A DNA stretch of 64,000 bases, from the IMG/VR virus record IMGVR_UViG_3300029286_000009, positions 124,001-188,000 of that record; one strand, given 5' to 3'. The position numbers and the translations under genes are program-made. The notes beneath the pieces were generated by a model. It made no database searches. It was not told the origin of the DNA and worked only from the letters and a program-made list of their open reading frames with translations. Every line of letters starts with the position of its first letter. Position 1 is the first letter of the stretch. Below are positions 6,092 to 46,720 of the stretch, piece after piece.

Positions 6092-6316
6092 TCATACGTC
6101 TTTCCTTTTAATCACCCATTTGTAACGTAGGATACATTCTACGCCAATTGAGTGAAGGACTGCGGGGCGGACCCAGTTAGCTGTCTGGTCAATCCATACC
6201 TGTTGATCTTCTGCCTTTAAGTATATGCTGTATTGATCAACATCTTCTGCATTGGCAATCTTTTCGCCAGCACGCAAGTAAGGAAGCATTTCGTCAAATG
6301 TAAGATACTCTGTCAT
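6092..6316 (-). CDS. Tad2/DUF2829-like small protein
   Basis: LTFDEMLPYLRAGEKI...ECILRYKWVI matches the F-x-E-x-L-x(4)-G...W-x-I frame. Confidence 0.4.
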   Translation of the reverse strand: MTEYLTFDEMLPYLRAGEKIANAEDVDQYSIYLKAEDQQVWIDQTANWVRPAVLHSIGVECILRYKWVIKRKDV

Positions 6317-6470
6317 CTACTATTTCCCCCACTTTAAATTGTTGATTTTGAACCATAAGAATGTCGTATGTCAGTATAAGTGCACTTCTCACTTTACCGA
6401 TATCCTTTGGTTTAATGCCCCCGAATTTATTCGTGGGGAGTAGTCACACATGGTAGAACTTCTATGAAGA

Positions 6471-6689
6471 TTACATTTTTTTTCTCCGTTTTCCCACATT
6501 CCAATCACCTGTAATTACTTCTTCCCATGAGAGGCTGCTACTCGCACCTCTGAGCTTTCGACCACGATCGAACCGGCGGTAGCCCAACCGATAGTCACTT
6601 CTCAGATAATACTCAGTTACAATTGCACCAATAACTACGTGAACTACCTCACCACGGATAAGGTTTGGCATTATTTCTTCAAACTTCAC
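6471..6689 (-). CDS. Tad2/DUF2829-like small protein
   Basis: MKFEEIMPNLIRGEVV...LSWEEVITGDWNV. Confidence 0.4.
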   Translation of the reverse strand: MKFEEIMPNLIRGEVVHVVIGAIVTEYYLRSDYRLGYRRFDRGRKLRGASSSLSWEEVITGDWNVGKRRKKM

Positions 6690-6951: not shown

Positions 6952-7509
6952 TCAGGGCTTTTCCATCTCCGCAGCTATATCTGCTAAATTACATAAATCA
7001 ATGGTATCAGCAGCATAAGCAGCAGCACGAGCAGCATAAGCAGCAGCACGAGCAGCATTGGTGGCGAGATATTCTCTTGCCGCCTTAATCGCTTTGCGTG
7101 GGCGGTCGTCGGATGGGTATTTAGTCTCGAAGATCGAAAGCACCGCCTCGGCACAGAGCACAGCAAACTGTATCCGCATACACTGTCGCTTCTTGTTGTC
7201 CAGATACCAATCCGGCAATTTGAGACGTTGCGTTGTTGTCAAGACAAAGCAGCCTACTTTCCCCCAATCCTCAATGACGATCTCGCCTTCTGCTTCCCAC
7301 AAAAGAGGCTTCTGGATATTAGCGTGGAGCGGGTTTAATAGCAAAGCTAGATTGCTGTTACGGTAAGCGTGTACAACATCCACAGAGCATAGTTGCGGAT
7401 CGACACACACCGGGAGTTTTAGTGTTTTACCGGAGTACCACTGCGTTTCTCCGGGCTTCTTACGTTGAGTATACCCTTCTTGGTCAGTTAACTTGTATAG
7501 TGTAACCAT
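6952..7509 (-). CDS. Conserved phage protein (DUF7666-like N-terminus, DRPRKAI..AR helical C-terminus); paralog of 31465-32169
   Basis: LYKLT..W..G..LCS..HAY..LNP.H..WEAEG..DWGKVGC shared with 31465 gene. Confidence 0.6.
   Translation of the reverse strand: MVTLYKLTDQEGYTQRKKPGETQWYSGKTLKLPVCVDPQLCSVDVVHAYRNSNLALLLNPLHANIQKPLLWEAEGEIVIEDWGKVGCFVLTTTQRLKLPDWYLDNKKRQCMRIQFAVLCAEAVLSIFETKYPSDDRPRKAIKAAREYLATNAARAAAYAARAAAYAADTIDLCNLADIAAEMEKP
7009..7058. repeat. 21-bp tandem repeat, 2.4 copies
   Basis: AGCAGCATAAGCAGCAGCACG x2 plus partial; encodes ARAAAYA repeats. Confidence 0.9.
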
Positions 7510-13874: not shown

Positions 13875-16082
13875 TTAATTTGCCTTCTCCTTGGTGCCGC
13901 TGAGGTATCTGTCAATTTCCTCCACCAACACACGATTGATAAGTTTACGGTTAGGCGATTTGGGCAATGAAGATTTATCCATTACTTCATTCAGTGCTTT
14001 GTCTTCCTTTTCCGCCCACTCGATTAGTTCCTCATACTTCCAAGCACCATTACGAATAGCGAGTAATTCTTCTGCGTCAGGGCGTCGTACGATTACGCCT
14101 TTACCTTCTAGTATTTCTCGTGCCATACGCATGAGACGAACAAGGTGAAGGGCGTGTTTAGAGTTCCCATGAATCGCAATTTTACCTTTTCTTCTGGTGA
14201 TAAGAACTTCGTTTGGAACCGTAAAACACACAACATGTCCATTTTTAACCCTGACAGGATGAATGTGTTGAGACTTACTCAAGTATGCACAGGTTCTAGT
14301 TTTTCCGATATATACCTGATACATTGCACAGTTGCCAAATTCTCTTGGTTTACGATCATAATAGTAAGGGCCCCATACTTGTGATACAATTCCGGCTTGT
14401 AAACACATTATCTGGACATCATCAGCTAGCCTCTTCAGGCTTGTATAGTATATACTACTAAATTTTCGGTATGTGCCGTCTCCGCCAATTAATCCTTCTA
14501 GCATCAATCTAGCTTGTCTTTCGTTAAGTTTGTCTTTAAAATGTGGGAGATGTTTGTTTTTTGCTTTGCCACACAAACCATATATCTCATCAGCAAGTTG
14601 GGCAGAGAATGAGTAAACACATTCTTTTGTAATTCTGCCTGACTTTAGTGTACGCTCATAATAGTATCGCTTCGCACCGTAACATTCTCTCAGATTTTCT
14701 AACCAAGGAATAAGGGGACTAGCAGGGTGTTGCGATATATTTAAAGACTTTGCTTTGTTTTTATAGAAAATTATAGACCCTTCGGCAATATATACACCAA
14801 TCAGCCTAAGTTTTTCGTTAGGTATCGGGTAATCTTCTCTGGGATTACAAGTTAATCTTGCATGAAAAGATCCGTAACGAGATTTTTCTATCTTGTCTAC
14901 CGATATTAGTGCCCAATCTGCCTGCTCTGGGTTGTATTTGATAGTAAAGTTATTGGATTTTTGTCGGTGGGTTCTGGTTACAAGTAATCTATGGTTGCTT
15001 GTCACAACACAGTTAGATTGTTGCATCCTTATCTCATATAGGAACCCAGAAGCTCTGTATGAATCTCGACCCAAGAAATGTTGATACTCTAAATTTCCTT
15101 CAGTGTTGATCGTTCCTAATTTATCGTTCTCAGATATTTCTCTGTATAACTTCCAACCTGTATCAGTCAAAAACTCGGTATCACTTAGATAACAGTCAAA
15201 TCCGTGCTTTTGTTCAAGTTCTGATCTTTTCGGATTACGTTCCTGCTTCCACTTTTCGTAATGATTCCAATCTTCCAGGTGGTTCTTGTAAGCAGAATAT
15301 CTTTGAAGATAGTTTACGAAGTCAGAATCGAATCCCAGCGTTCTGTTCGCCGCCCGTTCTAACACATCCTTGAGATGGTCTACATTAGCCTCTATGTAGA
15401 GTTGTTCAGTCACTACATTAACCATACGAACCATTTCTGGTCCTAGCTGTATCTTGGTGTCTTCCGTCAAGTGGGTCTGATCAACTAACCATTCACCTAC
15501 TTGAAGTTCTATCATTTTCAGAGCACCGTGTAGTTGGTCCTTCGGGAATTTCATTCCTTCTATCCCGTAGTCTGCACGCGTAGGATAGGTGGGCGGGTTG
15601 CTAGTCCAGCGATGATGGTTGCGCATCCTTTTGAGCTGTTGCATAGCGTACCCACTAAAGCGGTGTTTAAGTAGCTTACTGAGGAATGCATCCTTGATTT
15701 TGGAGAACCTTTCCATAAGTGGGTGTGCATAGATGATTGAATCTTCAGGAACGAACAACAGTTCCAGCATATTCGGGTTTCCATCTGCTGCTAATCCGAT
15801 CATTTTTTTAAGTGACCAGATTACAATATCACTATCGGGAACCAAGTCTCTCCTTGTTCCTTTAGCAACCAGAGGAATTACTTCTTTGCTATCAGTTTGC
15901 TCGAAGTTACCAAACCCGTAGAAATATTCTTTAGGAGGAATAGTCGCCCCCCGGTAATCCATATCTGATTCGGGTGTATTTGTCCCGTAAAGTTGAGATC
16001 CTGCGGGGGTAAGATAGACAATGTTTGAACCTATCCAGTTTTTTATGTTTATCAAGCTTCCTTCCCTTCTATAATTCTCCAT
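13875..16082 (-). CDS. Predicted nucleotidyltransferase (Pol-beta superfamily, Nuc-transf/COG3541-like), intein-interrupted
   Basis: GSQLYGTNTPESDMDYRG motif; NPNMLELLF; after intein removal KHGFD|SKHALHLVRLMRMAREIL. Confidence 0.85.
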   Translation of the reverse strand: MENYRREGSLINIKNWIGSNIVYLTPAGSQLYGTNTPESDMDYRGATIPPKEYFYGFGNFEQTDSKEVIPLVAKGTRRDLVPDSDIVIWSLKKMIGLAADGNPNMLELLFVPEDSIIYAHPLMERFSKIKDAFLSKLLKHRFSGYAMQQLKRMRNHHRWTSNPPTYPTRADYGIEGMKFPKDQLHGALKMIELQVGEWLVDQTHLTEDTKIQLGPEMVRMVNVVTEQLYIEANVDHLKDVLERAANRTLGFDSDFVNYLQRYSAYKNHLEDWNHYEKWKQERNPKRSELEQKHGFDCYLSDTEFLTDTGWKLYREISENDKLGTINTEGNLEYQHFLGRDSYRASGFLYEIRMQQSNCVVTSNHRLLVTRTHRQKSNNFTIKYNPEQADWALISVDKIEKSRYGSFHARLTCNPREDYPIPNEKLRLIGVYIAEGSIIFYKNKAKSLNISQHPASPLIPWLENLRECYGAKRYYYERTLKSGRITKECVYSFSAQLADEIYGLCGKAKNKHLPHFKDKLNERQARLMLEGLIGGDGTYRKFSSIYYTSLKRLADDVQIMCLQAGIVSQVWGPYYYDRKPREFGNCAMYQVYIGKTRTCAYLSKSQHIHPVRVKNGHVVCFTVPNEVLITRRKGKIAIHGNSKHALHLVRLMRMAREILEGKGVIVRRPDAEELLAIRNGAWKYEELIEWAEKEDKALNEVMDKSSLPKSPNRKLINRVLVEEIDRYLSGTKEKAN
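14163..15194 (-). mobile_element. Intein (344 aa) with LAGLIDADG homing endonuclease
   Basis: Starts CYLSDTEFLT..GW, ends VCFTVPNEVLITRRKGKIAIHGN with +1 Ser; motifs LIGVYIAEGS and LEGLIGGDG. Confidence 0.9.
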
Positions 16083-16624
16083 TTACTTTTGAACGCCCAG
16101 TCTAGACTTAGTGGTGAGGTTCTCAGTCCTGTTAAACAGAATTCATAGCCGTTTTCGGCCTCAATAGCGTTAACTTCACCAGACTCCATACCTTTCAAGG
16201 CTTCTAGAAAAGAAAGGGGGTAATCTTTTACGACTTGCCACTTCATCTGTGTGAGTAAGCCATTCACCGAGCATCCGGAATCTAGCCATTTGTCCATAAA
16301 CACCTGCAATTTACCTTTACAGTATCTGTAGTTCCAGCAATTTCCTACGGGGCGCATGATGATAGTCTCATCCTCCGACATTTTATTCAGGGCGTCCAAA
16401 AAACTCACCCCACTGTCTGCGAGCTGAGAACAATTACCCGTAACTTCCCACTCTTCTTCTGGGAAGGAATTAACTGTAAGCATAGAGATTACCCACCTGC
16501 CACAATTACAGAGTTCCAGCTTTCCCTGGTTGAATCGATAGTTATTGTTGTTAGCATGCCCTACGGGCCTCATAACGAGACCTTCACACTCTGCCATCTT
16601 CTTCAAAGCGTCTATGAAGTTCAT
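16052..16624 (-). CDS. Protein with three tandem Tad2/DUF2829-like repeats
   Basis: MNFIDALKKM..EEWEV / SFLDALNKM..MKWQV / SFLEALKGM..SKWRI; start moved to ATG 16624. Confidence 0.5.
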   Translation of the reverse strand: MNFIDALKKMAECEGLVMRPVGHANNNNYRFNQGKLELCNCGRWVISMLTVNSFPEEEWEVTGNCSQLADSGVSFLDALNKMSEDETIIMRPVGNCWNYRYCKGKLQVFMDKWLDSGCSVNGLLTQMKWQVVKDYPLSFLEALKGMESGEVNAIEAENGYEFCLTGLRTSPLSLDWAFKSKWRIIEGKEA

Positions 16625-19664: not shown

Positions 19665-19853
19665 CTATTCTTTTTTCTTCGTACCTTCTACTTCTCTGCA
19701 CCAGTAATCGATTTGGTCCATCGCCCACTCGTGGAGATACTCTTCCTCCACGTAAGTGTGCTTGTCTCCTACTTCCTCTAACTCCTCATCATTTATATCA
19801 ACAACCTCTGAGTACAATTTGATTCCTAATTCTATATTGAATTCGAATTTCAC
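19665..19853 (-). CDS. Acidic hypothetical protein
   Basis: GTG start after GGAG; VKFEFNIELG... Confidence 0.5.
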   Translation of the reverse strand: MKFEFNIELGIKLYSEVVDINDEELEEVGDKHTYVEEEYLHEWAMDQIDYWCREVEGTKKKE

Positions 19854-20071
19854 CCGTCTCCTTTCTTTTCGGATTCTCTGACAACTTGAACAGTTACCGT
19901 GTTCCCGCAATATGGGCAGGTAATAGTATGGGGACACAATGGGCGAATAAAACGGTCTTCGAAGCCCATCTTTTTGTGGCAGTGGGGGCACTCCATTACT
20001 GTATCTATCCCAGGAACTGAAAAGTGAGACCAAGTATTCTCGAAATCATTCAGGATATCTTTCATTCTCAT
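19850..20071 (-). CDS. Zn-ribbon hypothetical protein
   Basis: CPHC/CPYC. Confidence 0.55.
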   Translation of the reverse strand: MRMKDILNDFENTWSHFSVPGIDTVMECPHCHKKMGFEDRFIRPLCPHTITCPYCGNTVTVQVVRESEKKGDG

Positions 20072-21821: not shown

Positions 21822-22011
21822 TTGTTGCTCCGTTTATTTCCACATTTTGTGAGTAATCCTCAAGAGCATCACAAAGTTTAGAGAGGCTGTAATGTATGTC
21901 ATCTTCATGACTTACCAGTCTCTCCCACTCCTTTCGCATAACTCTTGCCATATCGAGACACGCCCCTAACAAGGTTTTTGCTGCTATCGGGTCTACTGTC
22001 CTTGCTATCAT
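21790..22011 (-). CDS. hypothetical protein
   Basis: coupled to rpoZ. Confidence 0.5.
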   Translation of the reverse strand: MIARTVDPIAAKTLLGACLDMARVMRKEWERLVSHEDDIHYSLSKLCDALEDYSQNVEINGATNGATNNETYR

Positions 22012-22196
22012 TATTCTTCCTTTCTTACTTTGCCTGCCGCAATCTCCCGTAAAGCAGTTACTATCTCTTTGTTGTCACTCTCAACTAGGGGCTCTGCTCC
22101 TCCCTTTAACTCCTTCACTCTTTTGCTAGTCAAGTGCACCAATTCAAAGCGATTCCCTATTTCATTCAAGCAGTCATCAATGGTTACTCGTGCCAC
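22011..22196 (-). CDS. rpoZ: RNA polymerase omega subunit
   Basis: (M)[51 protein letters not shown]; GTG start after GGAGGAGG. Confidence 0.9.
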
Positions 22197-23324: not shown

Positions 23325-23741
23325 TTACTCTCTCTCTATCGCGTCATGTGTGGTCTCAACTTTTCCACACCTGGAGCATACACGACTCCACGCTAAATAG
23401 TTCCCATCACGAGATATAGCTGTTGGTTTATCCCATTTGTGTTCGCAGTCTCTCTGAATGGCTTCAAGGTTAAGAGCACGCCCGGCAAACTGCGTATCTT
23501 CGGGATCCCAGTCATACCATGTGATATTCCTACTTTCTTTCTGAAGAAAGTCTGGCACGTCTCTAAACACACAGATACCGACGAGACAATCTAGTTCGCA
23601 CAAAAGAGTTTCGACTCCTTCTCTGGTATAGTCTTGAAAGTTCGATAAGTCATACACATCCCAACTCCTGACACCATAATCGTCTTCTTCTGATGTAACT
23701 ATAATCATTTTATTTCCTTTCTTAGCATCCCAAATCAACAT
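23325..23741 (-). CDS. hypothetical protein with C-terminal CxH..CxxC
   Basis: 138 aa. Confidence 0.5.
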   Translation of the reverse strand: MLIWDAKKGNKMIIVTSEEDDYGVRSWDVYDLSNFQDYTREGVETLLCELDCLVGICVFRDVPDFLQKESRNITWYDWDPEDTQFAGRALNLEAIQRDCEHKWDKPTAISRDGNYLAWSRVCSRCGKVETTHDAIERE

Positions 23742-24513
23742 CTATAGTTGTGTATGTTGGGCTACCATAAGTTGCTTGCCCTACCCACACTGCTATTTTA
23801 TCGTTGATGTTCACTCTTACTTCTTCATGTGTATGACCACACAGAATAGAGAGTCTTGCATTTGTTTTGCAAGCCACTTCACTCAATGCCTTACCCATTC
23901 CTACATTGGAAAAGTGGGGAATGTACATATCGTCTGTTGCTAGCCCATTATACATACATGCTCTTACATAGGGTGGGGCATGAGTTACTACAATGATATG
24001 CCTTGCTCCAATCTTTAGTATTTGGTTGGTTAGTCTATTGGATGCTTTATCCGCTATCTTTTGCATCAAACCGAATGTTGCCCCGACTGTCAACCCGTGA
24101 AAATCATATATTGCACGATAGTCATTGAGTAGAAGCCCAGACCGTTGACTTCCGCCAGCACGACCATCCGCCCAGCCATCGTGACCAATTAGATAAGTGT
24201 GATCAGTTAGTTTAATTGCTGTGCAATTAGTAAGCCAAAATAAATTCTTGTGATCTTCTACAGACCTACGAACCATAGCATATACATGCTCGAATGTTGC
24301 CGCGTATATGTCATGGTTTCCTAAAACGAAGTACACAGGCATCGGGAGATTACCTAGCACTTTCAAGTGATATTTGATATGTTTCGCATCGCTAATATCG
24401 CCACTTATCACTACACCATCCGTTTCTGAAGTGGACAACCTACGCAAGAAATCGCCAAGTGCGTGATCATTCAACCATTCCAAATGGGGGTCAGTTACCC
24501 ATGCGAGTTGCAT
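23722..24513 (-). CDS. Calcineurin-like metallophosphoesterase
   Basis: TDPH, SGDIS, GNHD, THAP, CGHTH motifs. Confidence 0.9.
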   Translation of the reverse strand: MQLAWVTDPHLEWLNDHALGDFLRRLSTSETDGVVISGDISDAKHIKYHLKVLGNLPMPVYFVLGNHDIYAATFEHVYAMVRRSVEDHKNLFWLTNCTAIKLTDHTYLIGHDGWADGRAGGSQRSGLLLNDYRAIYDFHGLTVGATFGLMQKIADKASNRLTNQILKIGARHIIVVTHAPPYVRACMYNGLATDDMYIPHFSNVGMGKALSEVACKTNARLSILCGHTHEEVRVNINDKIAVWVGQATYGSPTYTTIDVDLGC

Positions 24514-27823: not shown

Positions 27824-28684
27824 TCATACAAGGGGGCCCGAGAATCGCTTACACACCACTACTGTAGTGTCGTCTGATAGCATCCCAAGTGCACGCAAGG
27901 ATGGACGAGTGATAGGGTTGGCCTTGGCTAGGAAACGTTGTAATTGGGCTGGATGATCATACCACGTTGCATCCTCCCAGATGTTCTGTATATTAGGAAT
28001 TATGACATCATTTCTACCAGGCAAAGTATGTCCTTCTTTCGCAAGGAAATCATCTATACCGTCTGTGGCTATTGCGATCGAAGTAACATCTCGGGGAAGC
28101 TTAACGATAGAGAATTGTCTGCAGGTCCCAGCATCCGGGTGATTCGCATCCAATTGATGGGCTAAATACGGCGGGGCATTTCCAGGAAATGGTCCTAACG
28201 CGGTGTGTTCTCCTTCAATCCAAATATGCCCGTCGCCAAAGTGAAATGCAAAACTCAGGTTGGGTGATAGATAGAACCCAATCACTGTAAAAAGATAACT
28301 TTCATAGATTAGATTCTTCACTACGTTCTCGTCGTCAGTAATGTCCACAGTACCCGCACGAATTAGCTCCAATAGTCTCTGGCGGCAACACTCCATTACC
28401 CAGGTAGGAATATCCTCCTCTGTAACCCACCAGGAGACGCGGCGTGCGTGTATTACAAGTGCAGGCACCAGATGCACTAATACTTGCGTGCATATTCGAG
28501 AACCAACTTCACTGAAACGCCCCGATCCGCAACCATCCGATACTACTGCGACTATATAGCCAGGGGTAGAAATGTGATCATACGCGTCTTGGTTGTTATA
28601 ACCCGCCGAATCATGGAAGGTACCTATTACACTCGCACCTGCAATCTTGTAGTTGTGCATTATATTCTCCGCATCGGGTAGCAA
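27824..28684 (-). CDS. PP2C-like protein phosphatase
   Basis: GASVIG..H..NNQDA, VVSDGCGS, FGDG, IATDG, DDTT. Confidence 0.85.
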   Translation of the reverse strand: MLPDAENIMHNYKIAGASVIGTFHDSAGYNNQDAYDHISTPGYIVAVVSDGCGSGRFSEVGSRICTQVLVHLVPALVIHARRVSWWVTEEDIPTWVMECCRQRLLELIRAGTVDITDDENVVKNLIYESYLFTVIGFYLSPNLSFAFHFGDGHIWIEGEHTALGPFPGNAPPYLAHQLDANHPDAGTCRQFSIVKLPRDVTSIAIATDGIDDFLAKEGHTLPGRNDVIIPNIQNIWEDATWYDHPAQLQRFLAKANPITRPSLRALGMLSDDTTVVVCKRFSGPLV

Positions 28685-30605: not shown

Positions 30606-31376
30606 TTAACTGGTGGTTCGTATCGCGTCCAGAAAGCAGGAATAAACTTCTTCTCCTATCGCTGCGACGGGCACCGCCACCTGATTGGCACGTGCTCTTG
30701 CCTGCTTTACCTCACGTATCATCTGGTCAAGGACACTGAGTCCAACCATCTTCTGCCGTGGGGTGGGGCAACCGGTGTAACGTGTATTCTCATAGTGACC
30801 AACGACCTTTTGTTCGTCAACCACAATGACCTGTTCCTTATGTTCTTTTGTCGCGGGGGCGATGGACACGGGAACCTTCGTCATCTCGGTCTTATTCGCC
30901 TTTACAGGCTCAACAGTTCGACGTACACCTTCCAGCTCAGCAGATGTGTCGTTCTCCCAGTGTACGGTTGTATCCAGCGTAGGAATCCTGTCCGCAAGAT
31001 TCCGAATCCGGATAAGTTCTTTTTCAAGCCACATCAACATCGTGACCGGAACTGCTGTGATCACTTTGCCATTGGGCAGCGTAAGATCTGCAACCGCCTG
31101 CATATTGGCGAGCTCACGCTGGTACTCGGCGTCCATGCGATCAACAATTGCCTTGCCTATATACTTAAATCTTTCCGGCACGGTTGTCGTCAGACTGACC
31201 CTTTCTCCAGCACCGGCTTCCTCCGCCACACGATCATCGTCGTGCATCTTCAAAATTTTAACGTGTCCATTGAGCAGTTCTTTCTTGTCCAAGAGTCGAC
31301 TGGTCTCGTCCAGCATCTTAGCCTGAACCGCCTCCAGCTCCGGAATTTTTGCCAAAAGTTCGTGCAACATTCCCAT
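30606..31376 (-). CDS. Conserved coiled-coil protein (recalled as DUF7873-like)
   Basis: LHELLA, TTV, VPVTMLMWLEK, IPTLD..W, ATKEH.EQV, VVG, VKQARARAN pattern; family name from memory only. Confidence 0.55.
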   Translation of the reverse strand: MGMLHELLAKIPELEAVQAKMLDETSRLLDKKELLNGHVKILKMHDDDRVAEEAGAGERVSLTTTVPERFKYIGKAIVDRMDAEYQRELANMQAVADLTLPNGKVITAVPVTMLMWLEKELIRIRNLADRIPTLDTTVHWENDTSAELEGVRRTVEPVKANKTEMTKVPVSIAPATKEHKEQVIVVDEQKVVGHYENTRYTGCPTPRQKMVGLSVLDQMIREVKQARARANQVAVPVAAIGEEVYSCFLDAIRTTS

Positions 31377-31464: not shown

Positions 31465-32169
31465 CTAGGTGGGTCTTGTCTCTATATCGACCGCTCGATT
31501 TATCAGTTCTAGCGTATTGTTACCACTTGCTGCACAGGCACTAAGTAGGAGTGCACACTGACGTTCTATTGCTATCCTATTACTATTATGCCGGACATCA
31601 GTAGCTATAGCAAGGGCATAAAGTAAGGTTTCCACGAAAGGCTGCAGTGTGCTGAAGCGAGGTGGGTTGAATCTGCCCACTGCTCTTTCTAGTTCTAGCG
31701 AAATAGTAGTAAACTGTTTTTGTCCTGCATATACCTCTTTAATCACATCAATCACCTGCTGCACTAAATTGCTCTCTGTATATTCTTTTTCTATTTCACA
31801 GGACACTGCTTCAACACAAAGAAGTGCTAATTGGAGAATTACTCTATTTTGTTTTACCTTATCGGAGTACCATTCGGGGTAATCTATCCTTTTTATTGTA
31901 GTTAACGCGAAACAGCCAACCTTACCCCAGTCCTCTACTACTACTTTCCCTTCTGCCTCCCATATTAGCGGGTTTCTAAACCCGGCATGCACAGGATTTA
32001 GTAATAGAGCACTGTTTGGATCTCGGTACGCATGGATAACATCACAAGAGCAAAGTTGTGGGTCCAGGCATGGTAATAGGGTTAAAGTTTGTCCTTCTCT
32101 CCAGTGTGTTTCTCCTGTTAGGTCGCTCCTAGTGACCCCACGTTCGTTTGTCAGCTTGTAAAGAACCAT
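31465..32169 (-). CDS. Paralog of 6952-7509 with different C-terminal helical region
   Basis: MVLYKLT..LCSCDVIHAY..WEAEGKVVVEDWGKVGCF. Confidence 0.6.
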   Translation of the reverse strand: MVLYKLTNERGVTRSDLTGETHWREGQTLTLLPCLDPQLCSCDVIHAYRDPNSALLLNPVHAGFRNPLIWEAEGKVVVEDWGKVGCFALTTIKRIDYPEWYSDKVKQNRVILQLALLCVEAVSCEIEKEYTESNLVQQVIDVIKEVYAGQKQFTTISLELERAVGRFNPPRFSTLQPFVETLLYALAIATDVRHNSNRIAIERQCALLLSACAASGNNTLELINRAVDIETRPT

Positions 32170-32188
32170 ATTTTTCCCTTTTCTTGGT

Positions 32189-32839
32189 TTATCCCAAGAT
32201 TGTGTCCAGAGCATTACTCAACTCCTGTTTTGGGAACAATTTTACTATATGGAAAACATTTACACCACCATCTAATACGCATGTACCCAGATAATGGCAA
32301 TTAGGTGGTAAGTCCCAACCTGAAGGTAATAAGGAAAAGTAACGACGTTCGTAGGGAGCAGTCGGATACACAATCGCCCACATACTGGGGGGCTCGCCAT
32401 CATTAGGAACCTCTATATGCACAATGTTTGCACCCACAGGCATGTCTAATTCGGTTACATCATCTACCGGATCAACTTCATATCTCCAAATTTGCATTTT
32501 TGTTCCCGTTCCAGTGTCGTTCCTTACTGGATGTTCGCAGATTTTGTAATCTCGGATAGTGACATGTTCCTCGTAATAATCTCGCCACTCTGCGACTTTC
32601 TGATTTAGTGTGGTAGCTAGTTCATCTTTGTTGCATACAATGAAGAAGGGTGCACTAAAGGCCCCAGTTTTAATATAGTTCGTAGCCTCCGCAACGTCAA
32701 CCATTGTAATGATGGGAAGCTTTGCACCTATTGCGGTTTCAATAGTCAATATCGCATCTGTTATTGATCTACCGGAGTTGCTCATAACTAATTCCTTTCT
32801 CATTCTCTGTAATGCCAATCTTAATGCAGTTAATTCCAT
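32189..32839 (-). CDS. hypothetical protein with common phage C-terminal beta domain
   Basis: IWRY..MPVGA.I..MWAIV..P..R.F..G..YLGT..VFH. Confidence 0.55.
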   Translation of the reverse strand: MELTALRLALQRMRKELVMSNSGRSITDAILTIETAIGAKLPIITMVDVAEATNYIKTGAFSAPFFIVCNKDELATTLNQKVAEWRDYYEEHVTIRDYKICEHPVRNDTGTGTKMQIWRYEVDPVDDVTELDMPVGANIVHIEVPNDGEPPSMWAIVYPTAPYERRYFSLLPSGWDLPPNCHYLGTCVLDGGVNVFHIVKLFPKQELSNALDTILG

Positions 32840-35816: not shown

Positions 35817-36244
35817 TCCTCATCCTCCTCGTAGGGGAACACGGAATCCATGAAAGCATGAGTAGAGTCTCGATTAGCGTCGATCTCAGCCATCTTCCAC
35901 AGAATTTCTTGGTAAACTTCTGACCGATAACTTTTCTCTCCTACGCGTGGGCTCGGGCTGTAATCGAACACATAGCTAGAATGATGATAATCTACGTCAG
36001 TCGCAGGGGGTGTCAACACGCCCTTTTCTTCGTAAAGAATGACAGCCTTGACGAACTTTCTGAGTTCAGACCACATCTTATGTCGAGACTTACGTTGCAC
36101 CTTGGGTAGCCTAACGGGATGTTTGCACCTTTTTGTGCCTCCTGAAGACACAACCATTTGTGTACTTCTGCTTGGATCTATCATGGGGACTGTCTTTCTT
36201 TGATACTTCTTCTGGGGGTATGCACCCCAAAGATGGTAACGCAA
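35813..36244 (-). CDS. hypothetical protein
   Basis: start uncertain. Confidence 0.45.
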   Translation of the reverse strand: MRYHLWGAYPQKKYQRKTVPMIDPSRSTQMVVSSGGTKRCKHPVRLPKVQRKSRHKMWSELRKFVKAVILYEEKGVLTPPATDVDYHHSSYVFDYSPSPRVGEKSYRSEVYQEILWKMAEIDANRDSTHAFMDSVFPYEEDEE

Positions 36245-36887
36245 TTACACACTCCGGAAACACAGTATCCATTGATCGCCACTCCCCATTTTGTGTGCAA
36301 TACTCTAATTTCCATGTCTTGTCAGAGACTTTTGTGACAACCGATTCAGAGCAACCAGACAGAGCTTCCCAAACGGGGATATCGTCGCAGACAGACCAGT
36401 AGTAATCTGTAGGGCCTCGGGAGTCATTGTCATTACCACCCAGTATTACAATTTCCGGATCTGACACAACATACCAGAACAGGTCCCGGAAGAAGGCATT
36501 GCAAATACGGCGTTCCGGATCGCCTGCTCTATATGGCAGAGCAACACAACTTTGGTGGTCGATGTAATAATCGTCGCAATCCTTGTCCAGCACGTTGCGT
36601 TGTATGATACGGTTTACCTTCTCTATGTCAGCTTGCGTGATCCCTCTGAGTGTATTGGTAAGGCTTTGCAACAACTGAACTGCCATATAAACCGCCTTGT
36701 CCTCAGGTTTAGTTAACTTAAAGAATTGCCAGCCAAATTCGCCTGGCTTCCAGCCAGCTCCCGATATACCTGGCCCCTTCTTCTTGTTCAGAGTCACAAC
36801 GGAGTGACTAGAGGATGAATTAGTTGTAAAGGTTTCTCTCTGGTAAATGTGTCGATTTAAACAAATACGAAAAAATATTGATTGCAT
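36111..36887 (-). CDS. hypothetical protein
   Basis: 258 aa. Confidence 0.55.
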   Translation of the reverse strand: MQSIFFRICLNRHIYQRETFTTNSSSSHSVVTLNKKKGPGISGAGWKPGEFGWQFFKLTKPEDKAVYMAVQLLQSLTNTLRGITQADIEKVNRIIQRNVLDKDCDDYYIDHQSCVALPYRAGDPERRICNAFFRDLFWYVVSDPEIVILGGNDNDSRGPTDYYWSVCDDIPVWEALSGCSESVVTKVSDKTWKLEYCTQNGEWRSMDTVFPECVIALPSLGCIPPEEVSKKDSPHDRSKQKYTNGCVFRRHKKVQTSR

Positions 36888-37222
36888 TTACCTGCCTTTC
36901 TTGTAATTCGGAGTAACCCGAGTTTCTCCATTTGTATCGTATACCGCCCCACAACTGAATTAGACCAGCCAGCAACAGATCCGATTTGTTTTTGGTCATA
37001 GCCACTAATACCGCGGCTTAGTTCCCCAGGATGTCGGCGGGCGATAATTAGTAAAGCCTGTAGTACATCGATACACGTACGAGCGGCTTTAGTGTGACCT
37101 GCTCCAAACGAACATTTTATCTTTTCAATTGCTTCGTCAATTTTTCTTTGTTCTTTTTGAGCAGGGGTGGTAGGTTCACCTATCACCGCAATCATCTGCT
37201 CACACCATTCCGCTCGTGGCAT
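36857..37222 (-). CDS. Winged helix-turn-helix protein
   Basis: DQKQIGSVAGWSNSVVGRYTIQMEKLGLLRITR; SD GGAAGG. Confidence 0.6.
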   Translation of the reverse strand: MPRAEWCEQMIAVIGEPTTPAQKEQRKIDEAIEKIKCSFGAGHTKAARTCIDVLQALLIIARRHPGELSRGISGYDQKQIGSVAGWSNSVVGRYTIQMEKLGLLRITRKAGKCNQYFFVFV

Positions 37223-37233
37223 GGTTCACCTTC

Positions 37234-37509
37234 CTATGCTAGGTTATCAGGAGAAACATTCATACTGAGGACCCTGGTCATGTCAGGGACTTCCGCCCGA
37301 GGAACATAGCCAGTCTCAGTCCCTTCTCTCTTGGGAAGGGTGCTTGACAGAGCTTCCACCTCATAATACATGTCATTGAGCAGCTTGTCTCTTTCTTCTT
37401 TTGCTTCTCGGAGTGAGTTTTCTATACTCTTGATTTCCAGCTGCCATTGGTCATAGGTGTCTATCAAACTAACTAGTGAATCTACTTTGTTTCTGAATTC
37501 TGATACCAT
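37234..37509 (-). CDS. Coiled-coil hypothetical protein
   Basis: 91 aa. Confidence 0.55.
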   Translation of the reverse strand: MVSEFRNKVDSLVSLIDTYDQWQLEIKSIENSLREAKEERDKLLNDMYYEVEALSSTLPKREGTETGYVPRAEVPDMTRVLSMNVSPDNLA

Positions 37510-38147
37510 CGTTTTGGTTCTCCTTTGAATTTGGGTTGCAGTCTTTGTACGGTAAATTCTATCCGATCAGCCCCCGGTCCGTACATCCGGTTGCACCGCT
37601 TGATTATTTTGTTACGTTCTTCAGCAAACTGGGTGTATTTATCCAAGTAGTCAGTCACACCAGGATTGCGATAAATCAGCCATGAATAATATTTAGATCT
37701 TAGCCAGGCTAACCTTTGTGCATCTGAAAAACTGCCCTTGAACTGTGTAAGATAATAATCGTAAAGACAAGCTATGGTGGTCGCAGAAAGTAAATTTGCG
37801 TTCGCACCACGAATTACAAATAGAGAAGTTCCTTCGGAATCATGACATTTAGTAAGAACAACACTTAGCCTAAGTTTTTGCAACACACGCTGAAGGATGT
37901 CTTCGTTCCATCCCCCTGTGCTAATCCCAGGTACAGAATGACTGGGAGAACGTTCAACTCCGTCTTCATGGACTTGTCTTATAAGAGCATATTGAGCCAG
38001 CTCTTCAGCTATAGGCCCGCAAAAGCCACACTCTTCAATCTTGCTAACTAGTCCAGGGTAGAACTCTGTTATGTGTTCTTCAAAAGATTTGCCGCTACAA
38101 AAGTTGGGCAATAACAAAACTAATGTAATACTTAGGACTTTTTGCAC
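37482..38147 (-). CDS. Secreted or membrane-anchored hypothetical protein
   Basis: Signal-like N-terminus; SD GGAGG. Confidence 0.6.
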   Translation of the reverse strand: MQKVLSITLVLLLPNFCSGKSFEEHITEFYPGLVSKIEECGFCGPIAEELAQYALIRQVHEDGVERSPSHSVPGISTGGWNEDILQRVLQKLRLSVVLTKCHDSEGTSLFVIRGANANLLSATTIACLYDYYLTQFKGSFSDAQRLAWLRSKYYSWLIYRNPGVTDYLDKYTQFAEERNKIIKRCNRMYGPGADRIEFTVQRLQPKFKGEPKRWYQNSETK

Positions 38148-38419
38148 AAATCCTCCTTGTGTTAGTTAAAATTCAGTTGCAGATTCCCACCGATAAACAT
38201 TTTCTTGCTCCATTCTTTCTATGTCCCACGTTCCTTCTGGGGTTTGGTAGACAAAGCCAACAAAGTATACATCATTACCTTTTCCGCAATCTGGAGAATA
38301 GAAGTCATCAATGTAAGCCCAACACGGAAACTGCTCGGGGTCCCCGCTAACTTCAGTAAACTCGTTCTTCTCTTCAATTTGCTTCCTGAGTCTAACCCAC
38401 TCAGCTTCATTTGTAACTA

Positions 38420-38560
38420 ATGGCGTTTTGTTTTCCTTTTTATTTATTTTTTTTATTCTTACCCTCCTCTTTTACTATATATATATTTGAGGGTATAGCG
38501 GTATTAGTACTCTAATACTGCCTATACTAGTATAGGAGGGTTGAGAAAGAAAATGATATA
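38420..38560. promoter_or_regulatory. Divergence point between the two gene arms, with stacked palindromes
   Basis: Pyrimidine-to-purine switch; GCGGTATTAG/CTAATACTGC hairpin(38498-38521); perfect 16-bp palindrome CCTATACTAGTATAGG(38521-36). Confidence 0.6.
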
Positions 38561-38731
38561 AAAGAAAGAGGTGCGGAATGTCTCATGATAGAGACAATAA
38601 ATGTCAGAGAGAAGACTGTAAGTGGTGGAATCCTGATTTTCCGATCAGTTGTCTTCAGTGGGATATTCAACGTTCTGCTGTGATTCTCGGTATCGAGAAG
38701 TGTGCTCGACATACAGTGGAGGAGAAGCGAA

Positions 38732-38926
38732 ATGCCGCACAGCATTGACGACAAATGTTATCGAGAAGATTGTTGGTGGTGGGATAATCAGCAGCCTTGT
38801 AACTGTTTATTGACCGCAACAAAATCGGTAGATCCTCAAACTTGTGAGGACCATAGACGTAATGCTAATTATCTCTGTGGATGCGGATTTTTTCATGGAC
38901 CAGGGGAACGGTGCGGTCCATGGTAA
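38732..38926 (+). CDS. Cys-rich small protein ending CGCG.FH.P.ERCGPW
   Basis: SD GGAGGAG; motif shared with 46051. Confidence 0.6.
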   Translation: MPHSIDDKCYREDCWWWDNQQPCNCLLTATKSVDPQTCEDHRRNANYLCGCGFFHGPGERCGPW

Positions 38927-39017
38927 ATTTGAATTTAGGAGGTTAGCATGTGGCACATAAATGCCCCAAAACTCTCGGATTTGATGCCGAGGGACTACAT
39001 TAAGAAGGAGCCTATAA

Positions 39018-39536
39018 ATGGCACAATTGAAGTTACTGAACGAAGAGAGCCTCAACAAGGAGTTACTGAACATTGGGAAGAAGCGGGATGCTGTGGAGAA
39101 AGTTCTGGAGCAGTCCCGCCAGCAGATGAACGAAGCCTACGCTAAAGCCGACGAGTTGAAGAAACAGAAAGTATTGTTTCAAACACTGAAAGAAACGATC
39201 GGTGAGACAGCAAAAGTGAGATCTGCTTACGCACGTGGTCTAGCTCAAGGTATGGGTATTGTTTTCGCTGATGGGGAGGCAGAATCATCATTGTTGGCGT
39301 TACTGGAGGAGTTTGCATTACAGGATGCGAGCAAAGAGACACGAGAGTCCAAGGGGAAGTCAACACCTAGAGCAAATGTTATTGTGCCTGAGAAGCCGAA
39401 AGGTAAACGTGGACGACCGCCTAAGGTCAAGGTTACAGAATCTGAAGAGCTCGAGGTTAATACCTCAGCCATTTCTAATCTTGCTGACTCTGATAGCGTG
39501 GAGGAAGTTGAGTATGACGATGGTTACGACGACTAA
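39018..39536 (+). CDS. Coiled-coil protein with AT-hook and acidic tail
   Basis: KGKRGRPPK; acidic C-terminus. Confidence 0.6.
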   Translation: MAQLKLLNEESLNKELLNIGKKRDAVEKVLEQSRQQMNEAYAKADELKKQKVLFQTLKETIGETAKVRSAYARGLAQGMGIVFADGEAESSLLALLEEFALQDASKETRESKGKSTPRANVIVPEKPKGKRGRPPKVKVTESEELEVNTSAISNLADSDSVEEVEYDDGYDD

Positions 39537-39773
39537 TTAAGCATCCTTCTGTACTGCCTAGCATTTAAAAGAGATATTGGAAAGGAGAAGAATGGAAGTT
39601 TTCTTTAAATGCGGAGATTGCAAGATAGGGATATTCTCTAAAGATAGGCTCACACGAAGACGAAAACATATTATCTATAAGTGTAACGTTTGTGGTAGAG
39701 AAGTCGTTGTCAAACGTAATCCGCGCAGTACAGAGTCACAACCCCAAATTAACTAGAAAGGCAGAATTCCAAG

Positions 39774-40523
39774 ATGAATGCCAAGCCGCTCGACCACCCG
39801 ATCTACGGGTCTATCCCACACCTGCCTCAATCACGTTTGGGGCCGTCTGATAAGCAAGCCTCGATTGGACATGTCCGCATCGCAACTGAAAAGCCACGCG
39901 ACAAATGCGATCTAATCATTGTGAGCGAGAAAATAGACGGGAGCAATGTTGGTGTAGCTAAGTTACCAGATAGCTCTCTCGTTCCCCTAATACGGTCAGG
40001 GTACGTAGCCGATACTTCGCCCTATCTCCAGCACCGCTATTGGGCTAGCTGGGTGTATGAGCACAGCCACAGGTTTAACTCACTTTTATCTAACGGGGAA
40101 TGGTGTGTAGGAGAGTGGTGCATTCAAGCACATGGAACTAAGTATACTTTTCTGGATGAACCTTTTTTCCTATTTGATATTTTCTCTACTGATAAACGTA
40201 TCACTAAATTACAGCTTGACTTAAGAAACAACTCTCTTTTAAAGCCATTTTGTTGCCCGCGGGTGTTCTTCTGTGCCAACTCAGCTCTTCCTGTTTGCGA
40301 AGCATCGGCAGTTCTCGGGGATCACGGTTTTCACGGAGCTCTCGACAAGGCAGAAGGTGCGGTTTGGCGGGTGGAACGTAATGGAATGGTAGACTTTCTA
40401 TGTAAATACGTTCGCCCACAGAAATATGACGGTATCTACCTCCCTGAGATAGCAGGTACTCATTATATTGTGTGGAACGAATGGGGTAGCGATTGTCAAT
40501 CACTTAAACATTTATTAAGATAG
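39774..40523 (+). CDS. ATP-dependent RNA ligase family protein
   Basis: YGSIPHL, EKIDGSN (motif I), GEW, LFDI, EGAVWR, CKYVR. Confidence 0.8.
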   Translation: MNAKPLDHPIYGSIPHLPQSRLGPSDKQASIGHVRIATEKPRDKCDLIIVSEKIDGSNVGVAKLPDSSLVPLIRSGYVADTSPYLQHRYWASWVYEHSHRFNSLLSNGEWCVGEWCIQAHGTKYTFLDEPFFLFDIFSTDKRITKLQLDLRNNSLLKPFCCPRVFFCANSALPVCEASAVLGDHGFHGALDKAEGAVWRVERNGMVDFLCKYVRPQKYDGIYLPEIAGTHYIVWNEWGSDCQSLKHLLR

Positions 40524-41365: not shown

Positions 41366-41806
41366 ATGACAGGGTATGAGGCTATTCGTTATGCTTGCGG
41401 GGGTAGTAAAATTCGTAACTCATCTTGGACATGGGCTCCGTGTTCATTTATAACTCTCCGTATCAGCCCACCCCCACAAGGCAATGAGTTTATGATCCAC
41501 ACCGATGCTGGTGCTTTCCCGCGTCCGTATACGTGGGACAACTCAGCGTTACTGGACACAAATTGGGAAGTCATAAGCGAAAAATCCATCTCTTCTTGCA
41601 CACCCGTAACCCAAGAGAAAAGAGATATTCGTGTTTGGCACACAAGCCTGGCAGGAACACCTATGACTTATGCGACAGCTATAGAATGTGCTAAAGAGCG
41701 GGCCCGCAGTAATCCTAATGTGAAGTATATTCTCGTCAGAGAGATACAGTCTGTTTGCTATGAAGTCCCAGATGTTGAACCGAAACTAGTGATCAAAGAG
41801 TTGTAA
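41366..41806 (+). CDS. Tad2/DUF2829-like domain fused to a C-terminal phage domain
   Basis: MTGYEAIRYACGGSKIRNSSW..WDNSALLDTNWEVI; SD GGAGG. Confidence 0.5.
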   Translation: MTGYEAIRYACGGSKIRNSSWTWAPCSFITLRISPPPQGNEFMIHTDAGAFPRPYTWDNSALLDTNWEVISEKSISSCTPVTQEKRDIRVWHTSLAGTPMTYATAIECAKERARSNPNVKYILVREIQSVCYEVPDVEPKLVIKEL

Positions 41807-45164: not shown

Positions 45165-45872
45165 ATGACCAGATTGACTGGATTTGAAGCTCAGATATAC
45201 ATACTGGGGGGTGGCAAGGCTCGGCAGCTCATATGGCCGCTCGGGTGGTATGTGGTTATTGATGAGTTCGGGCACTTCATTCATACTAACTCTACAGGTG
45301 CCAAGATCGTAACCTGGGAGTGGACTGCAGACTCTCTTGAATGTGCGATATGGGAACCCTATATTGAGCCGAAGGGTGACCCGGCGGAAGACCGGCGCTG
45401 TGCGACGTGCGGGGGATGGAAAACTGATGCATATCAGCAGGCTGGTGTGTGCACGAATACTTCTAGCCCCTTTTGCGGACGCACTTATGGAACTTCAGCT
45501 CTTCCGTGTAAAGATTGGTATCCTATTGTCATTCCCCCTTCCTCCTTCTTCATCGTCTGGTCACCCGAAGGAGCCACGCCACCCGAAATGCGATATGCGA
45601 CACATGATCAGGCTAGAGAAGCAGCCGAGGGCATGGCACTACTGCATCCAAACCAAAAGTTTTACCCGTTGTTCTGTAACGAATACTGTGTCTCTTCCGC
45701 GACACGGTGTCCCTTACCATCGGAGTGGGAGAGAGCGTGGGATGGTTTGCAACAGTCGTTTGATGGCGACAATTGTCGCCATATACTTAAAACGATTTGT
45801 GACCATGATCCCCGTAGGAAGACCGAAGTTCGTCCAGTATGGAAGGAAACGAAAGAGAGGGAGATGCTATGA
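45165..45872 (+). CDS. Modular protein: Tad2-like N-terminus, Cys-rich domain, shared phage domain
   Basis: LTGFEAQIYILGGGKARQLIW..WEWTADSLECAIWE; CATC; FIVWSPEG..PNQKFY. Confidence 0.5.
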   Translation: MTRLTGFEAQIYILGGGKARQLIWPLGWYVVIDEFGHFIHTNSTGAKIVTWEWTADSLECAIWEPYIEPKGDPAEDRRCATCGGWKTDAYQQAGVCTNTSSPFCGRTYGTSALPCKDWYPIVIPPSSFFIVWSPEGATPPEMRYATHDQAREAAEGMALLHPNQKFYPLFCNEYCVSSATRCPLPSEWERAWDGLQQSFDGDNCRHILKTICDHDPRRKTEVRPVWKETKEREML

Positions 45873-46339: not shown

Positions 46340-46720
46340 ATGCGAATTCAACAACAAATACAACAAAAACTAACAACAGCGATGGTAGAAAAAGATGAGG
46401 ATACTAAGTCTACTCTCCGATTCATTTTGGGGGAGTTTAGCCGGTGCCGAGAAAAGGAAATTCCCGACCTATTGGCTATTAAGATTGTGCGTAAGGCGAT
46501 TGAAGATGAGCAGTCTATAAACGGTTCCCAACAGTTTATCAATATCCTCAAACAGTTTATCCCAACCCCTGTCACAAAAGAAGAAGTTTTGGTATGGATT
46601 CAAGACAATATCGACTTTTCCCTTTTCCGTAACAAACCACAAGCAATGCAGCCCATTATGGCACATTTTGCCGGGCGAATAAGTGGGAGTACAGTAAAAG
46701 AGATTATAGAGGCTTTGTAA
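46340..46720 (+). CDS. yqeY: GatB/YqeY domain protein
   Basis: ..TAMVEKD..KSTLRFILGE..ILKQFIP..EEV..I..N..AM..IM..F.GR.SG..VK. Confidence 0.75.
   Translation: MRIQQQIQQKLTTAMVEKDEDTKSTLRFILGEFSRCREKEIPDLLAIKIVRKAIEDEQSINGSQQFINILKQFIPTPVTKEEVLVWIQDNIDFSLFRNKPQAMQPIMAHFAGRISGSTVKEIIEAL

What the first reader, a model, noticed from the sequence alone, without database searches (positions are those of the whole stretch)
6092..6689. Expansion of Tad2/DUF2829-like small domains (five genes, seven domains)
Seen: 6092-6316, 6471-6689, 16052-16624 (three repeats), 41366-41806 and 45165-45872 all begin F/Y-x-E/D-A/hydrophobic-L...G and end with a D/E/K/N/I-W-x-V/I/P strand. Established: SPO1 Tad2 (DUF2829) has this frame (SFGEALEVLKQG...DVLAEDWDIV) and sequesters Thoeris/CBASS nucleotide signals. 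Inference: a diversified sponge repertoire against several signalling immune systems. The similarity is at motif level only.
Basis: partly seen in the sequence, partly recalled or inferred. Interest (0 to 1): 0.6.

Follow-up and report, generated by a model that had tools for sequence, protein, structure and literature searches.

The report
Orphan phage genes, two possibly Tad2-like
Five small orphan genes of a freshwater jumbo phage share a loose helix-to-tryptophan motif, but only the two at 6092-6689 show any measurable likeness to the Tad2 immune-signal sponge, and those two lack its ligand-contact residues, so a sponge repertoire is not shown.

Summary
They are not a demonstrable family.

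- **Within-set similarity:** it is significant only between repeats 1 and 2 of the 16052-16624 protein (E 3e-13). It is probable between the 41366 and 45165 proteins.
- **Pfam Tad2-like model (PF11195):** none of the five matches, either in the protein scan or in a six-frame scan of the whole 259.7-kb phage. The SPO1 Tad2 control scored 84.8 bits.
- **Gene A (6092-6316):** weak but real sequence likeness to Tad2 (hhalign P 1.7e-4; rank 2 of 329 small genes).
- **Genes A and B (6471-6689):** both have ESM Atlas models whose structural neighbours include Tad2-like clusters (TM 0.67-0.74). This is a lead, not a test.
- **Ligand residues:** in alignment, A and B lack the W-N and S-Q-T-D gcADPR contacts that are invariant in my Tad2 alignment.
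- **The other three proteins:** both AlphaFold2 jobs failed (pLDDT 32 and 41), so their fold is untested.
- **Relatives:** none was found for any of the five.

Verdict: A, and perhaps B, are divergent Tad2-fold proteins without the canonical pocket. The "diversified sponge repertoire" remains a hypothesis. Interest is modest.

The parts
6092..6316 (-). Gene A, 74 aa. An orphan and the best Tad2-like candidate. Its N-terminal helix/beta1 and the beta3-beta4 hairpin resemble the Tad2 family. The W-N-G-K loop and the S-Q-T-D motif are absent.
   Evidence: ORF and gene call. hhalign P 1.7e-4. BLASTP 48% identity over 23 aa to P0062. Global hhalign z 4.3 against shuffles. Rank 2 of 329. Atlas neighbours include PF11195 clusters. 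Alignment A5.
6471..6689 (-). Gene B, 72 aa, GTG start overlapping the stop of the upstream 70-aa gene by 4 nt. An orphan. Its ESM Atlas model resembles the Tad2-like fold. There is no sequence signal and the W-N loop is absent.
   Evidence: gene calls 19727-19939 and 19936-20154 in L024. Atlas pLDDT 0.75, TM 0.74/0.70 to a Tad2-like cluster. hhalign probability 0.7%. Global z 0.3. Alignment A5.
16427..16624 (-). Gene C (16052-16624, 190 aa), repeat 1.
   Evidence: 40% identity to repeat 2, E 3e-13. Profile domain hit 141.9 bits.
16217..16414 (-). Gene C, repeat 2. The only segment with a W-N dipeptide near the beta1-beta2 loop position.
   Evidence: hhalign of the repeat profile against Tad2: P 0.009, probability 4%.
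16055..16222 (-). Gene C, shorter third segment, a degenerate repeat. It shares the 14-residue N-terminal helix motif and a terminal K-W-R-I. Gene C's stop overlaps the start of the RlaP gene (13875-16082).
   Evidence: Smith-Waterman z 3.4 to repeat 2. Only 1.0 bit against the repeat 1+2 profile. Overlap with RlaP.
41366..41806 (+). Gene D, 146 aa. N-terminal motif-bearing segment about 41366-41578. C-terminal segment shared with E about 41621-41764. It lies between a 259-aa ORF and the CCA-adding enzyme gene (41830-43320).
   Evidence: Alignment A1. BLASTP to E. Word search found only itself.
45165..45872 (+). Gene E, 235 aa. N-terminal segment 45165-45374. Cys-rich insert about 45399-45509. 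Segment shared with D about 45543-45683. It lies upstream of a YqeY-like ORF and an RNA ligase gene.
   Evidence: AF2 of residues 1-75 with D as second row gave pLDDT 41.

Best explanation
The five ORFs are real accessory genes of a roughly 260-kb jumbo phage from lake water. No relatives were detected for any of them. They fall into four unrelated or only loosely related groups, not one expanded family.

- **A** is most likely a highly diverged member of the Tad2-like (DUF2829) fold. It keeps the N-terminal helix, beta1, the beta3-beta4 hairpin and the terminal tryptophan strand.
- **B** probably has the same fold.
- Both A and B have lost the W-N loop and the S-Q-T-D helix that hold gcADPR in Tad2. 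They are therefore most likely small non-enzymatic binding proteins on a Tad2-type scaffold whose ligand, if any, is not gcADPR bound in the canonical way (inferred).
- **C** is an internally duplicated protein: two clear copies of about 60 aa plus a decayed third. It is translationally coupled to an RlaP RNA-repair nucleotidyltransferase.
- **D and E** are probable paralogs with two shared segments, sitting among RNA-repair genes.
- For C, D and E the Tad2 likeness rests only on the loose motif and a compatible helix-then-strands hydrophobic pattern. Their fold and function are open.

Shown: the genes, the repeats, the D/E paralogy, the failure against PF11195, and the missing ligand residues in A and B. 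Inferred: the fold of A and B, and any binding function.
For: - **Genes and boundaries:**
- **Groupings:**
- **A against Tad2:** (z 4.2-4.5; rank 2 of 329; z 4.3; 0 of 60 shuffles reach it).
- **Atlas fold neighbours for A and B:**
- **No PF11195 match:** (hmmscan at E 10; six-frame, whole phage, 0 matches; the control scored 84.8 bits; own profile of 121 Tad2 proteins, all filters off, best 3.8 bits).
- **Ligand residues:** family invariants; their absence in A and B; their role.
- **Orphan status:**
- **Context among RNA-repair genes:**
Against: - The fold evidence for A and B is one source only, the ESM Atlas. Its own caveats apply: feature scores under 0.9 are leads only, TM above 0.5 means little for short chains, and A's model has pLDDT 0.57.
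- Other neighbours at similar TM belong to unrelated families: ResT/TelK, HTH_23, NTP_transf_5.
- B has no sequence signal at all.
- The residue mapping for A and B rests on a MAFFT alignment at 21-33% identity.
- No fold could be obtained for C, D or E, so they could still be Tad2-like, or something quite different.
Confidence: 0.5

Rival explanations
1. All seven segments are Tad2/DUF2829 domains, and the phage carries a diversified set of sponges, each sequestering a different immune signal (gcADPR isomers, His-ADPR, cyclic di- and trinucleotides, cCMP/cUMP).
For: - A common frame with similar spacing, 54-62 residues from the N-motif aromatic to the terminal W in six of seven segments.
- Collinear end-to-end hhalign alignments of the C-repeat and D/E profiles on Tad2, placing the tryptophans in equivalent columns (P 0.009 and 0.026).
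- Atlas neighbours for A and B.
- The Tad2 family is known to be functionally versatile (10.1101/2025.08.24.671296; 10.1101/2023.11.15.567273).
- Motif enrichment of 3 against 0.32 expected.
Against: - No PF11195 match for any.
- hhalign probabilities of 2-4% for C and D/E.
- B, C1, C2 and the E N-domain are at shuffle level in global alignment.
- Genome-wide ranks are 11 for C, 97 for B and 158 for E, of 329.
- Cross-group similarity is at chance.
- The gcADPR site is reported as conserved in about 99% of Tad2 proteins, yet it is absent in A and B.
- No ligand or oligomer evidence.
Confidence: 0.12
2. Coincidence. The five are unrelated fast-evolving orphan proteins. An N-terminal amphipathic helix ending in glycine followed by a few strands and a buried tryptophan is a generic small alpha+beta pattern, and none of them, A and B included, descends from or works like Tad2.
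For: - Cross-group pairwise scores at chance.
- The looser motif is only 4 against 1.8 expected.
- Atlas neighbours at similar TM include unrelated families.
- HMMER finds nothing.
- The top hhalign scorer in the genome is an unrelated 249-aa ORF.
Against: A's similarity to Tad2 proteins exceeds every one of 60 shuffles. It covers two separate segments, the N-terminal 23 residues and the I-Y-hydrophobic-K...W hairpin. Sequence and the Atlas model point independently to the same family for A, and B's best named structural neighbour is the same family.
Confidence: 0.25
3. C, D and E are accessory subunits or specificity factors of the phage's RNA-repair machinery rather than anti-signalling sponges. 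C would work with RlaP; D and E with the CCA-adding enzyme and RNA ligases.
For: - Gene neighbourhood only.
- C's stop overlaps the RlaP start by 4 or 31 nt, depending on the gene caller.
- D lies 23 nt upstream of the CCA-adding enzyme gene and downstream of an RNA ligase gene.
- E lies upstream of the YqeY-like and Rnl-type ligase genes.
Against: No homology to any RNA-binding or repair family. Related phages identified by terminase lack these genes. Adjacency in a jumbo-phage accessory region is weak evidence.
Confidence: 0.13

Closest known systems
Tad2 of Bacillus phage SPO1 (gp34.65; Pfam PF11195 Tad2-like/DUF2829; PDB 8SME, 8WJE)
   Same: Small size. N-terminal helix F-x-E-A-L...G followed by an antiparallel sheet and a terminal D-W-x-V strand. 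Alignment A5 keeps F, L, G and the last W invariant across A, B and five Tad2 proteins. A also matches the I-Y-M-K...W hairpin. Atlas structural neighbours of A and B are PF11195 clusters. Encoded by a phage among small accessory genes.
   Different: No match to PF11195. The R-x-G-W-N-G-K loop is missing and S-Q-T-D is replaced in A and B. These residues are invariant in the family alignment and contact gcADPR. Tetramer formation and ligand binding are unknown. C is a tandem multi-domain protein, and D and E carry extra C-terminal segments.
HgmTad2 / AcrIIA7 and SptTad2 (PDB 8KBI, 9KZR, 8WJD)
   Same: They show that the Tad2 scaffold tolerates large changes and can gain other pockets. Cyclic dinucleotides are bound by the beta2-beta5 insertion.
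   Different: Those proteins keep the W-N and S-x-T-D gcADPR site and carry a 35-41-residue insertion. A, B and the C repeats are short, with no comparable insertion and no conserved gcADPR site.
Tad2-like/WDGH fusion proteins (ESM Atlas cluster, PF11195 + PF25311)
   Same: Structural neighbour of A at TM 0.67 by query. Shows that Tad2-like domains occur in multi-domain proteins, as proposed for C, D and E.
   Different: No WDGH domain or any other Pfam domain is detected in the five proteins.
Other phage signal sponges (Tad1, Acb2, Acb4)
   Same: Small, phage-encoded, oligomeric ligand binders.
   Different: Unrelated folds. No sequence or family match here.

Membership tests
Tad2-like / DUF2829 (PF11195) | Match to the Pfam profile at or above its gathering score of 25 bits. 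| tested here: not met
   hmmscan of all five at E up to 10 gave no PF11195 row. A six-frame search of the whole 259.7-kb phage gave 0 matches at E 10. The same search gave 84.8 bits for SPO1 Tad2. My own profile of 121 Tad2 proteins with filters off gave at best 3.8 bits.
Tad2-like / DUF2829 (PF11195) | Fold: N-terminal helix, five-stranded antiparallel sheet, short helix before the last strand (10.1101/2023.05.01.538930). | tested here: inconclusive
   A and B: ESM Atlas models have PF11195 clusters among their nearest structures, at TM 0.67-0.69 for A (pLDDT 0.57) and 0.74/0.70 for B (pLDDT 0.75). This is lead-level evidence from a single source. C, D and E: AlphaFold2 gave pLDDT 32 and 41, so no fold search was meaningful.
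Tad2-like / DUF2829 (PF11195) | gcADPR-contact residues W25, N26, W73 and S76/T78/D79 (SPO1 numbering), invariant in the family. | tested here: not met
   They are invariant in the 14-sequence family alignment A6. In alignment A5, A and B have a gap or other residues at W25-N26-G27-K28 and no S-Q-T-D. A keeps a W at the W73 column. In C repeat 2 and the E N-domain only some of these residues can be matched, by low-confidence hhalign alignments.
Tad2-like / DUF2829 (PF11195) | Significant sequence similarity to family members by profile-profile comparison. | tested here: inconclusive
   A: hhalign probability 49%, P 1.7e-4, N-terminal 22 residues only, and rank 2 of 329 genes. B: 0.7%. C-repeat profile 4.4% and D/E N-domain profile 1.9%.
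Tad2-like / DUF2829 (PF11195) | Homotetramer with ligand pockets at protomer interfaces. | not testable with these tools
   Needs size-exclusion chromatography, light scattering or a structure. No usable computational answer was obtained (see Tried and rejected).
Tad2-like / DUF2829 (PF11195) | Binds and sequesters a nucleotide immune signal and rescues phage from Thoeris, CBASS or Pycsar. | not testable with these tools
   Requires binding and plaque assays.

The most novel reading that the evidence does not exclude
A freshwater jumbo phage has built a set of seven Tad2-fold domains that have diverged beyond profile detection. The set would include a three-domain tandem protein that imitates within one chain the oligomer interfaces where Tad2 pockets form. 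Rewired pockets would capture immune signals other than gcADPR.
Probability: 0.08. Interest if true: 0.7.

Novelty: new variant of a known kind. Interest (0 to 1): 0.3.

Why it matters
If A and B truly keep the Tad2 scaffold while lacking the gcADPR site, they would be natural examples of how far this sponge fold can drift. They would also be candidates for new ligand specificities in an environmental jumbo phage. A tandem Tad2-like protein would be a new architecture for a sponge. As it stands the evidence supports only a weak family link for one or two genes, so the practical value is a short list of five orphan genes worth a binding screen.

Tried and rejected
- **AlphaFold2:** C alone gave pLDDT 32. 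E residues 1-75 with D as the only homolog gave pLDDT 41. Both models are unusable, so I ran no Foldseek or VIA searches, whose matches would be meaningless.
- **Circular modelling avoided:** I did not add Tad2 sequences to the alignments. That would force the fold and make the test circular.
- **Complex prediction of B as four copies:** no answer. This is not evidence either way.
- **Exhaustive HMMER search with C:** only itself, plus two long, highly repetitive proteins (P0122, P0123) whose scores are summed over many short stretches. I rejected these as spurious.
- **Word searches with C and D:** each found only itself.
- **IMG/VR scans with C, A and the D/E alignment, and a metagenome scan with the D/E alignment:** nothing but the source contig.
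- **Four related phages found by terminase (49-61% identity), plus a 50-kb fragment with an identical terminase:** no A, B, C-repeat or D/E homolog in any of them. No PF11195 match in the four related phages.
- **PDB sequence searches:** with A, B, C, the C-repeat profile and the D/E profile there were no Tad2 hits, although Tad2 entries are present.
- **PHROGs and NCBIfam:** nothing useful.
- **tblastn of A against phage genomes:** noise only.
- **IMG/VR scan with a Tad2 alignment:** returned only canonical Tad2 genes, so it did not broaden the profile.
- **Other limits:** No alternative genetic code was needed.

Full report
**Setting.** The window is bases 124001-188000 of a 259,732-base IMG/VR virus record, 96% complete by CheckV. 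The record is from a lake-water metagenome. The same sequence recurs without a single difference in freshwater runs of six studies and in a 320-kb ENA contig. Terminase comparison finds only distant relatives, at 49-61% identity, with genomes of 211-545 kb. Genes run on the minus strand up to about 38 kb and on the plus strand after that, with a matching change in GC skew. Most genes have no family. The recognisable ones are largely RNA-repair enzymes: RlaP, two RNA ligases, a CCA-adding enzyme, a metallophosphatase and an AAA_33 kinase.

**The observation.** I call the five ORFs A to E:
- A: 6092-6316, minus strand, 74 aa
- B: 6471-6689, minus strand, 72 aa
- C: 16052-16624, minus strand, 190 aa
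- D: 41366-41806, plus strand, 146 aa
- E: 45165-45872, plus strand, 235 aa

All five are open, and independent gene callers call them with exactly these boundaries. B starts at a GTG that overlaps the stop of the upstream gene by 4 nt. C's stop overlaps the start of the RlaP gene. In D and E the N-motif is one residue shorter than stated.

**Is it a family?** Pairwise Smith-Waterman scores were compared with shuffles.
- Clear homology appears only between C repeats 1 and 2 (z 22.5; 40% identity, E 3e-13).
- The N-terminal parts of D and E score z 6.6 and their C-terminal parts z 3.75. MAFFT aligns D and E collinearly at 37% identity, and BLASTP gives E 8e-4 for the N-terminal piece. They are probable paralogs with two shared segments. 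E has in addition a Cys-rich insert and a tail.
- C's third segment shares a 14-residue helix motif with repeats 1 and 2. It scores only 1.0 bit against their profile, so it is a decayed copy at best.
- Every other pairing is at chance, and phmmer within the genome finds no further paralogs.
- A strict regular expression for the motif hits A, B and C against 0.32 proteins expected. A looser one hits 4 against 1.8. Both were written post hoc.

**Sequence tests against Tad2.**
- The Pfam model PF11195 (Tad2-like) finds none of the five at E up to 10. It also finds nothing in a six-frame search of the whole phage. The same search recovers SPO1 Tad2 at 84.8 bits.
- I took SPO1 Tad2 from that locus and collected 120 homologs, all annotated PF11195. 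A profile built from them and run with all HMMER filters off gave a best score of 3.8 bits.
- Single-sequence hhalign against that family gives 28.7% probability for A and under 6% for the rest.
- Against a 14-sequence representative alignment, A reaches 49% (P 1.7e-4), over residues 1-22 only. B reaches 0.7%.
- In global hhalign, A exceeds all 60 shuffles (z 4.3). C3 and the D N-domain are marginal (z 2.1 and 2.4). B, C1, C2 and the E N-domain are at shuffle level.
- Ranked against all 329 genes of 50-260 aa in the phage, A is 2nd, C 11th, B 97th and E 158th.
- Profiles of the C repeats and of the D/E N-domains align end to end and collinearly on Tad2, with probabilities of only 4.4% and 1.9%.
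- BLASTP of A against its best family member gives 48% identity over the first 23 residues. That E of 1e-5 is for one comparison picked from 121.
- MAFFT also lines up A's I-Y-L-K...W hairpin with the family's I-Y-M-K...W.

By sequence, then, only A has a believable link to Tad2.

**Fold tests.** The ESM Atlas holds A and B letter for letter.
- A (model pLDDT 0.57): structural neighbours include a cluster that is 46% PF11195 (TM 0.69/0.61) and a Tad2-like/WDGH cluster (TM 0.67 by query). By language-model features the fourth hit is a cluster that is 12% PF11195, at 0.88.
- B (pLDDT 0.75, pTM 0.69): the second structural neighbour is a 77-aa cluster named Tad2-like (78% PF11195), with TM 0.74/0.70 over 65 residues.
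- The tool's own caveats apply. Feature scores under 0.9 are leads only. TM above 0.5 means little for short chains. Unrelated families appear at TM about 0.6.
- I had two AlphaFold2 jobs. C alone gave pLDDT 32. The E N-domain with D as the only available homolog gave pLDDT 41. Neither model can be searched meaningfully, so the fold of C, D and E is untested.

**Ligand site.** In SPO1 Tad2, gcADPR is held by W25, N26, W73 and D79, with T78, S76, I63, T65, D67 and H71 contributing (10.1101/2023.05.01.538930). In HgmTad2, mutating the equivalent W-N and S-T-D residues markedly reduces gcADPR binding. The site is reported as conserved in about 99% of Tad2 proteins (10.1101/2023.11.15.567273). In my 14-sequence family alignment R22, W25, N26, G27, K28, W73, S76, Q77, T78 and D79 are invariant. 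When A and B are aligned with five Tad2 proteins, only F7, L14, G17 and the last tryptophan are invariant. A and B have a gap or other residues in place of the W-N-G-K loop and nothing resembling S-Q-T-D. A keeps a tryptophan in the W73 column. By low-confidence alignment, C repeat 2 has a W-N two residues out of register plus the sheet tryptophan. E has tryptophans near both positions and a T-A-D that may answer to T-D. No segment keeps the full set.

**Orphan status.**
- Word searches with C and D return only themselves.
- The exhaustive HMMER search of 1.84 billion representatives with C returns itself and two spurious repeat proteins.
- IMG/VR and metagenome scans return only the source contig.
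- The terminase relatives lack all five genes, and the four related phages have no recognisable PF11195 gene.
- PDB sequence searches find no Tad2 hit, although Tad2 entries are present.
- PHROGs and NCBIfam give nothing useful.
- There is no sequence variation among samples to test selection, and no RNA run.

**Interpretation.**
- The best-supported picture is four groups, not one expansion.
- A is probably a much-diverged Tad2-fold protein. My estimate is about 0.7 for the fold.
- B probably has the same fold, about 0.5, resting on one predicted model.
- Both lack the canonical gcADPR contacts, so if they are sponges they bind something else or bind differently. They may equally be small protein-binding inhibitors.
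- C is an internally duplicated protein coupled to RlaP.
- D and E are paralogs embedded among RNA-repair genes. For these three, a role with the neighbouring enzymes is as defensible from context as a sponge role, and neither has direct support.
- SPO1 Tad2 itself showed no binding of the CBASS-type cyclic nucleotides tested. That property belongs to HgmTad2-type homologs with a long insertion, which none of these proteins has.

**Novelty and score.** Tad2 and DUF2829 are well known and widespread, so one or two extra divergent members in a jumbo phage would be a modest addition. The interesting part is a scaffold that has shed the conserved site, together with a possible tandem architecture, and that part is unproven. 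I rate interest at 0.3. The novel reading, seven rewired Tad2 domains including an intramolecular pseudo-oligomer, I put at about 0.08 probability and 0.7 interest if true.

Noticed in passing
window 13875-16082 (-): The RlaP RNA-repair nucleotidyltransferase gene (735 aa; Pfam RlaP on residues 10-161) carries a LAGLIDADG_3 segment at residues 524-592. The protein is roughly twice the usual length, so this looks like an intein or homing-endonuclease insertion.
   Followed up: no
window 23722-24513, 39774-40523, 41830-43320, 46340-46720, 46721-47821, 59290-60030: An unusually rich RNA-repair set: a metallophosphatase, two RNA ligases (one with the PHA02142 OB fold), a CCA-adding/poly(A)-polymerase-type enzyme with an HD domain, a YqeY-like ORF and an AAA_33/zeta-like kinase. 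This suggests counter-measures against tRNA- or RNA-cleaving host defences.
   Followed up: partly
window 6952-7509 (-), repeat at about 7006-7058: An Imm5-like putative immunity protein lies next to B. Its Ala-rich short repeat attracts many unrelated metagenome contigs when reads are laid, giving a false depth peak.
   Followed up: no
window 41621-41764 and 45543-45683 (+): D and E share a second, C-terminal segment of about 45 residues (V-W...G-x-P...Y-A-T...P-N-x-K) with no Pfam family and only weak PHROG hits of unknown function.
   Followed up: partly
window about 36000-40000: The coding strand switches from minus to plus and GC skew changes sign at about 38-39 kb. This is a divergent transcription point or a possible replication origin.
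   Followed up: no
window about 22011-22196 (-), 27824-28684 (-), 30606-31376 (-), 32189-32839 (-): A 61-aa ORF with an RNA_pol_Rpb6 (omega-like) hit on record, a PP2C-type phosphatase, and DUF7873 and DUF7352 proteins.
   Followed up: no
window 31465-32214 (-): This 249-aa ORF gave the highest hhalign score of the genome against the Tad2 profile: 71 columns, P 0.0011, probability 20%. It is probably chance and has no Pfam family.
   Followed up: no
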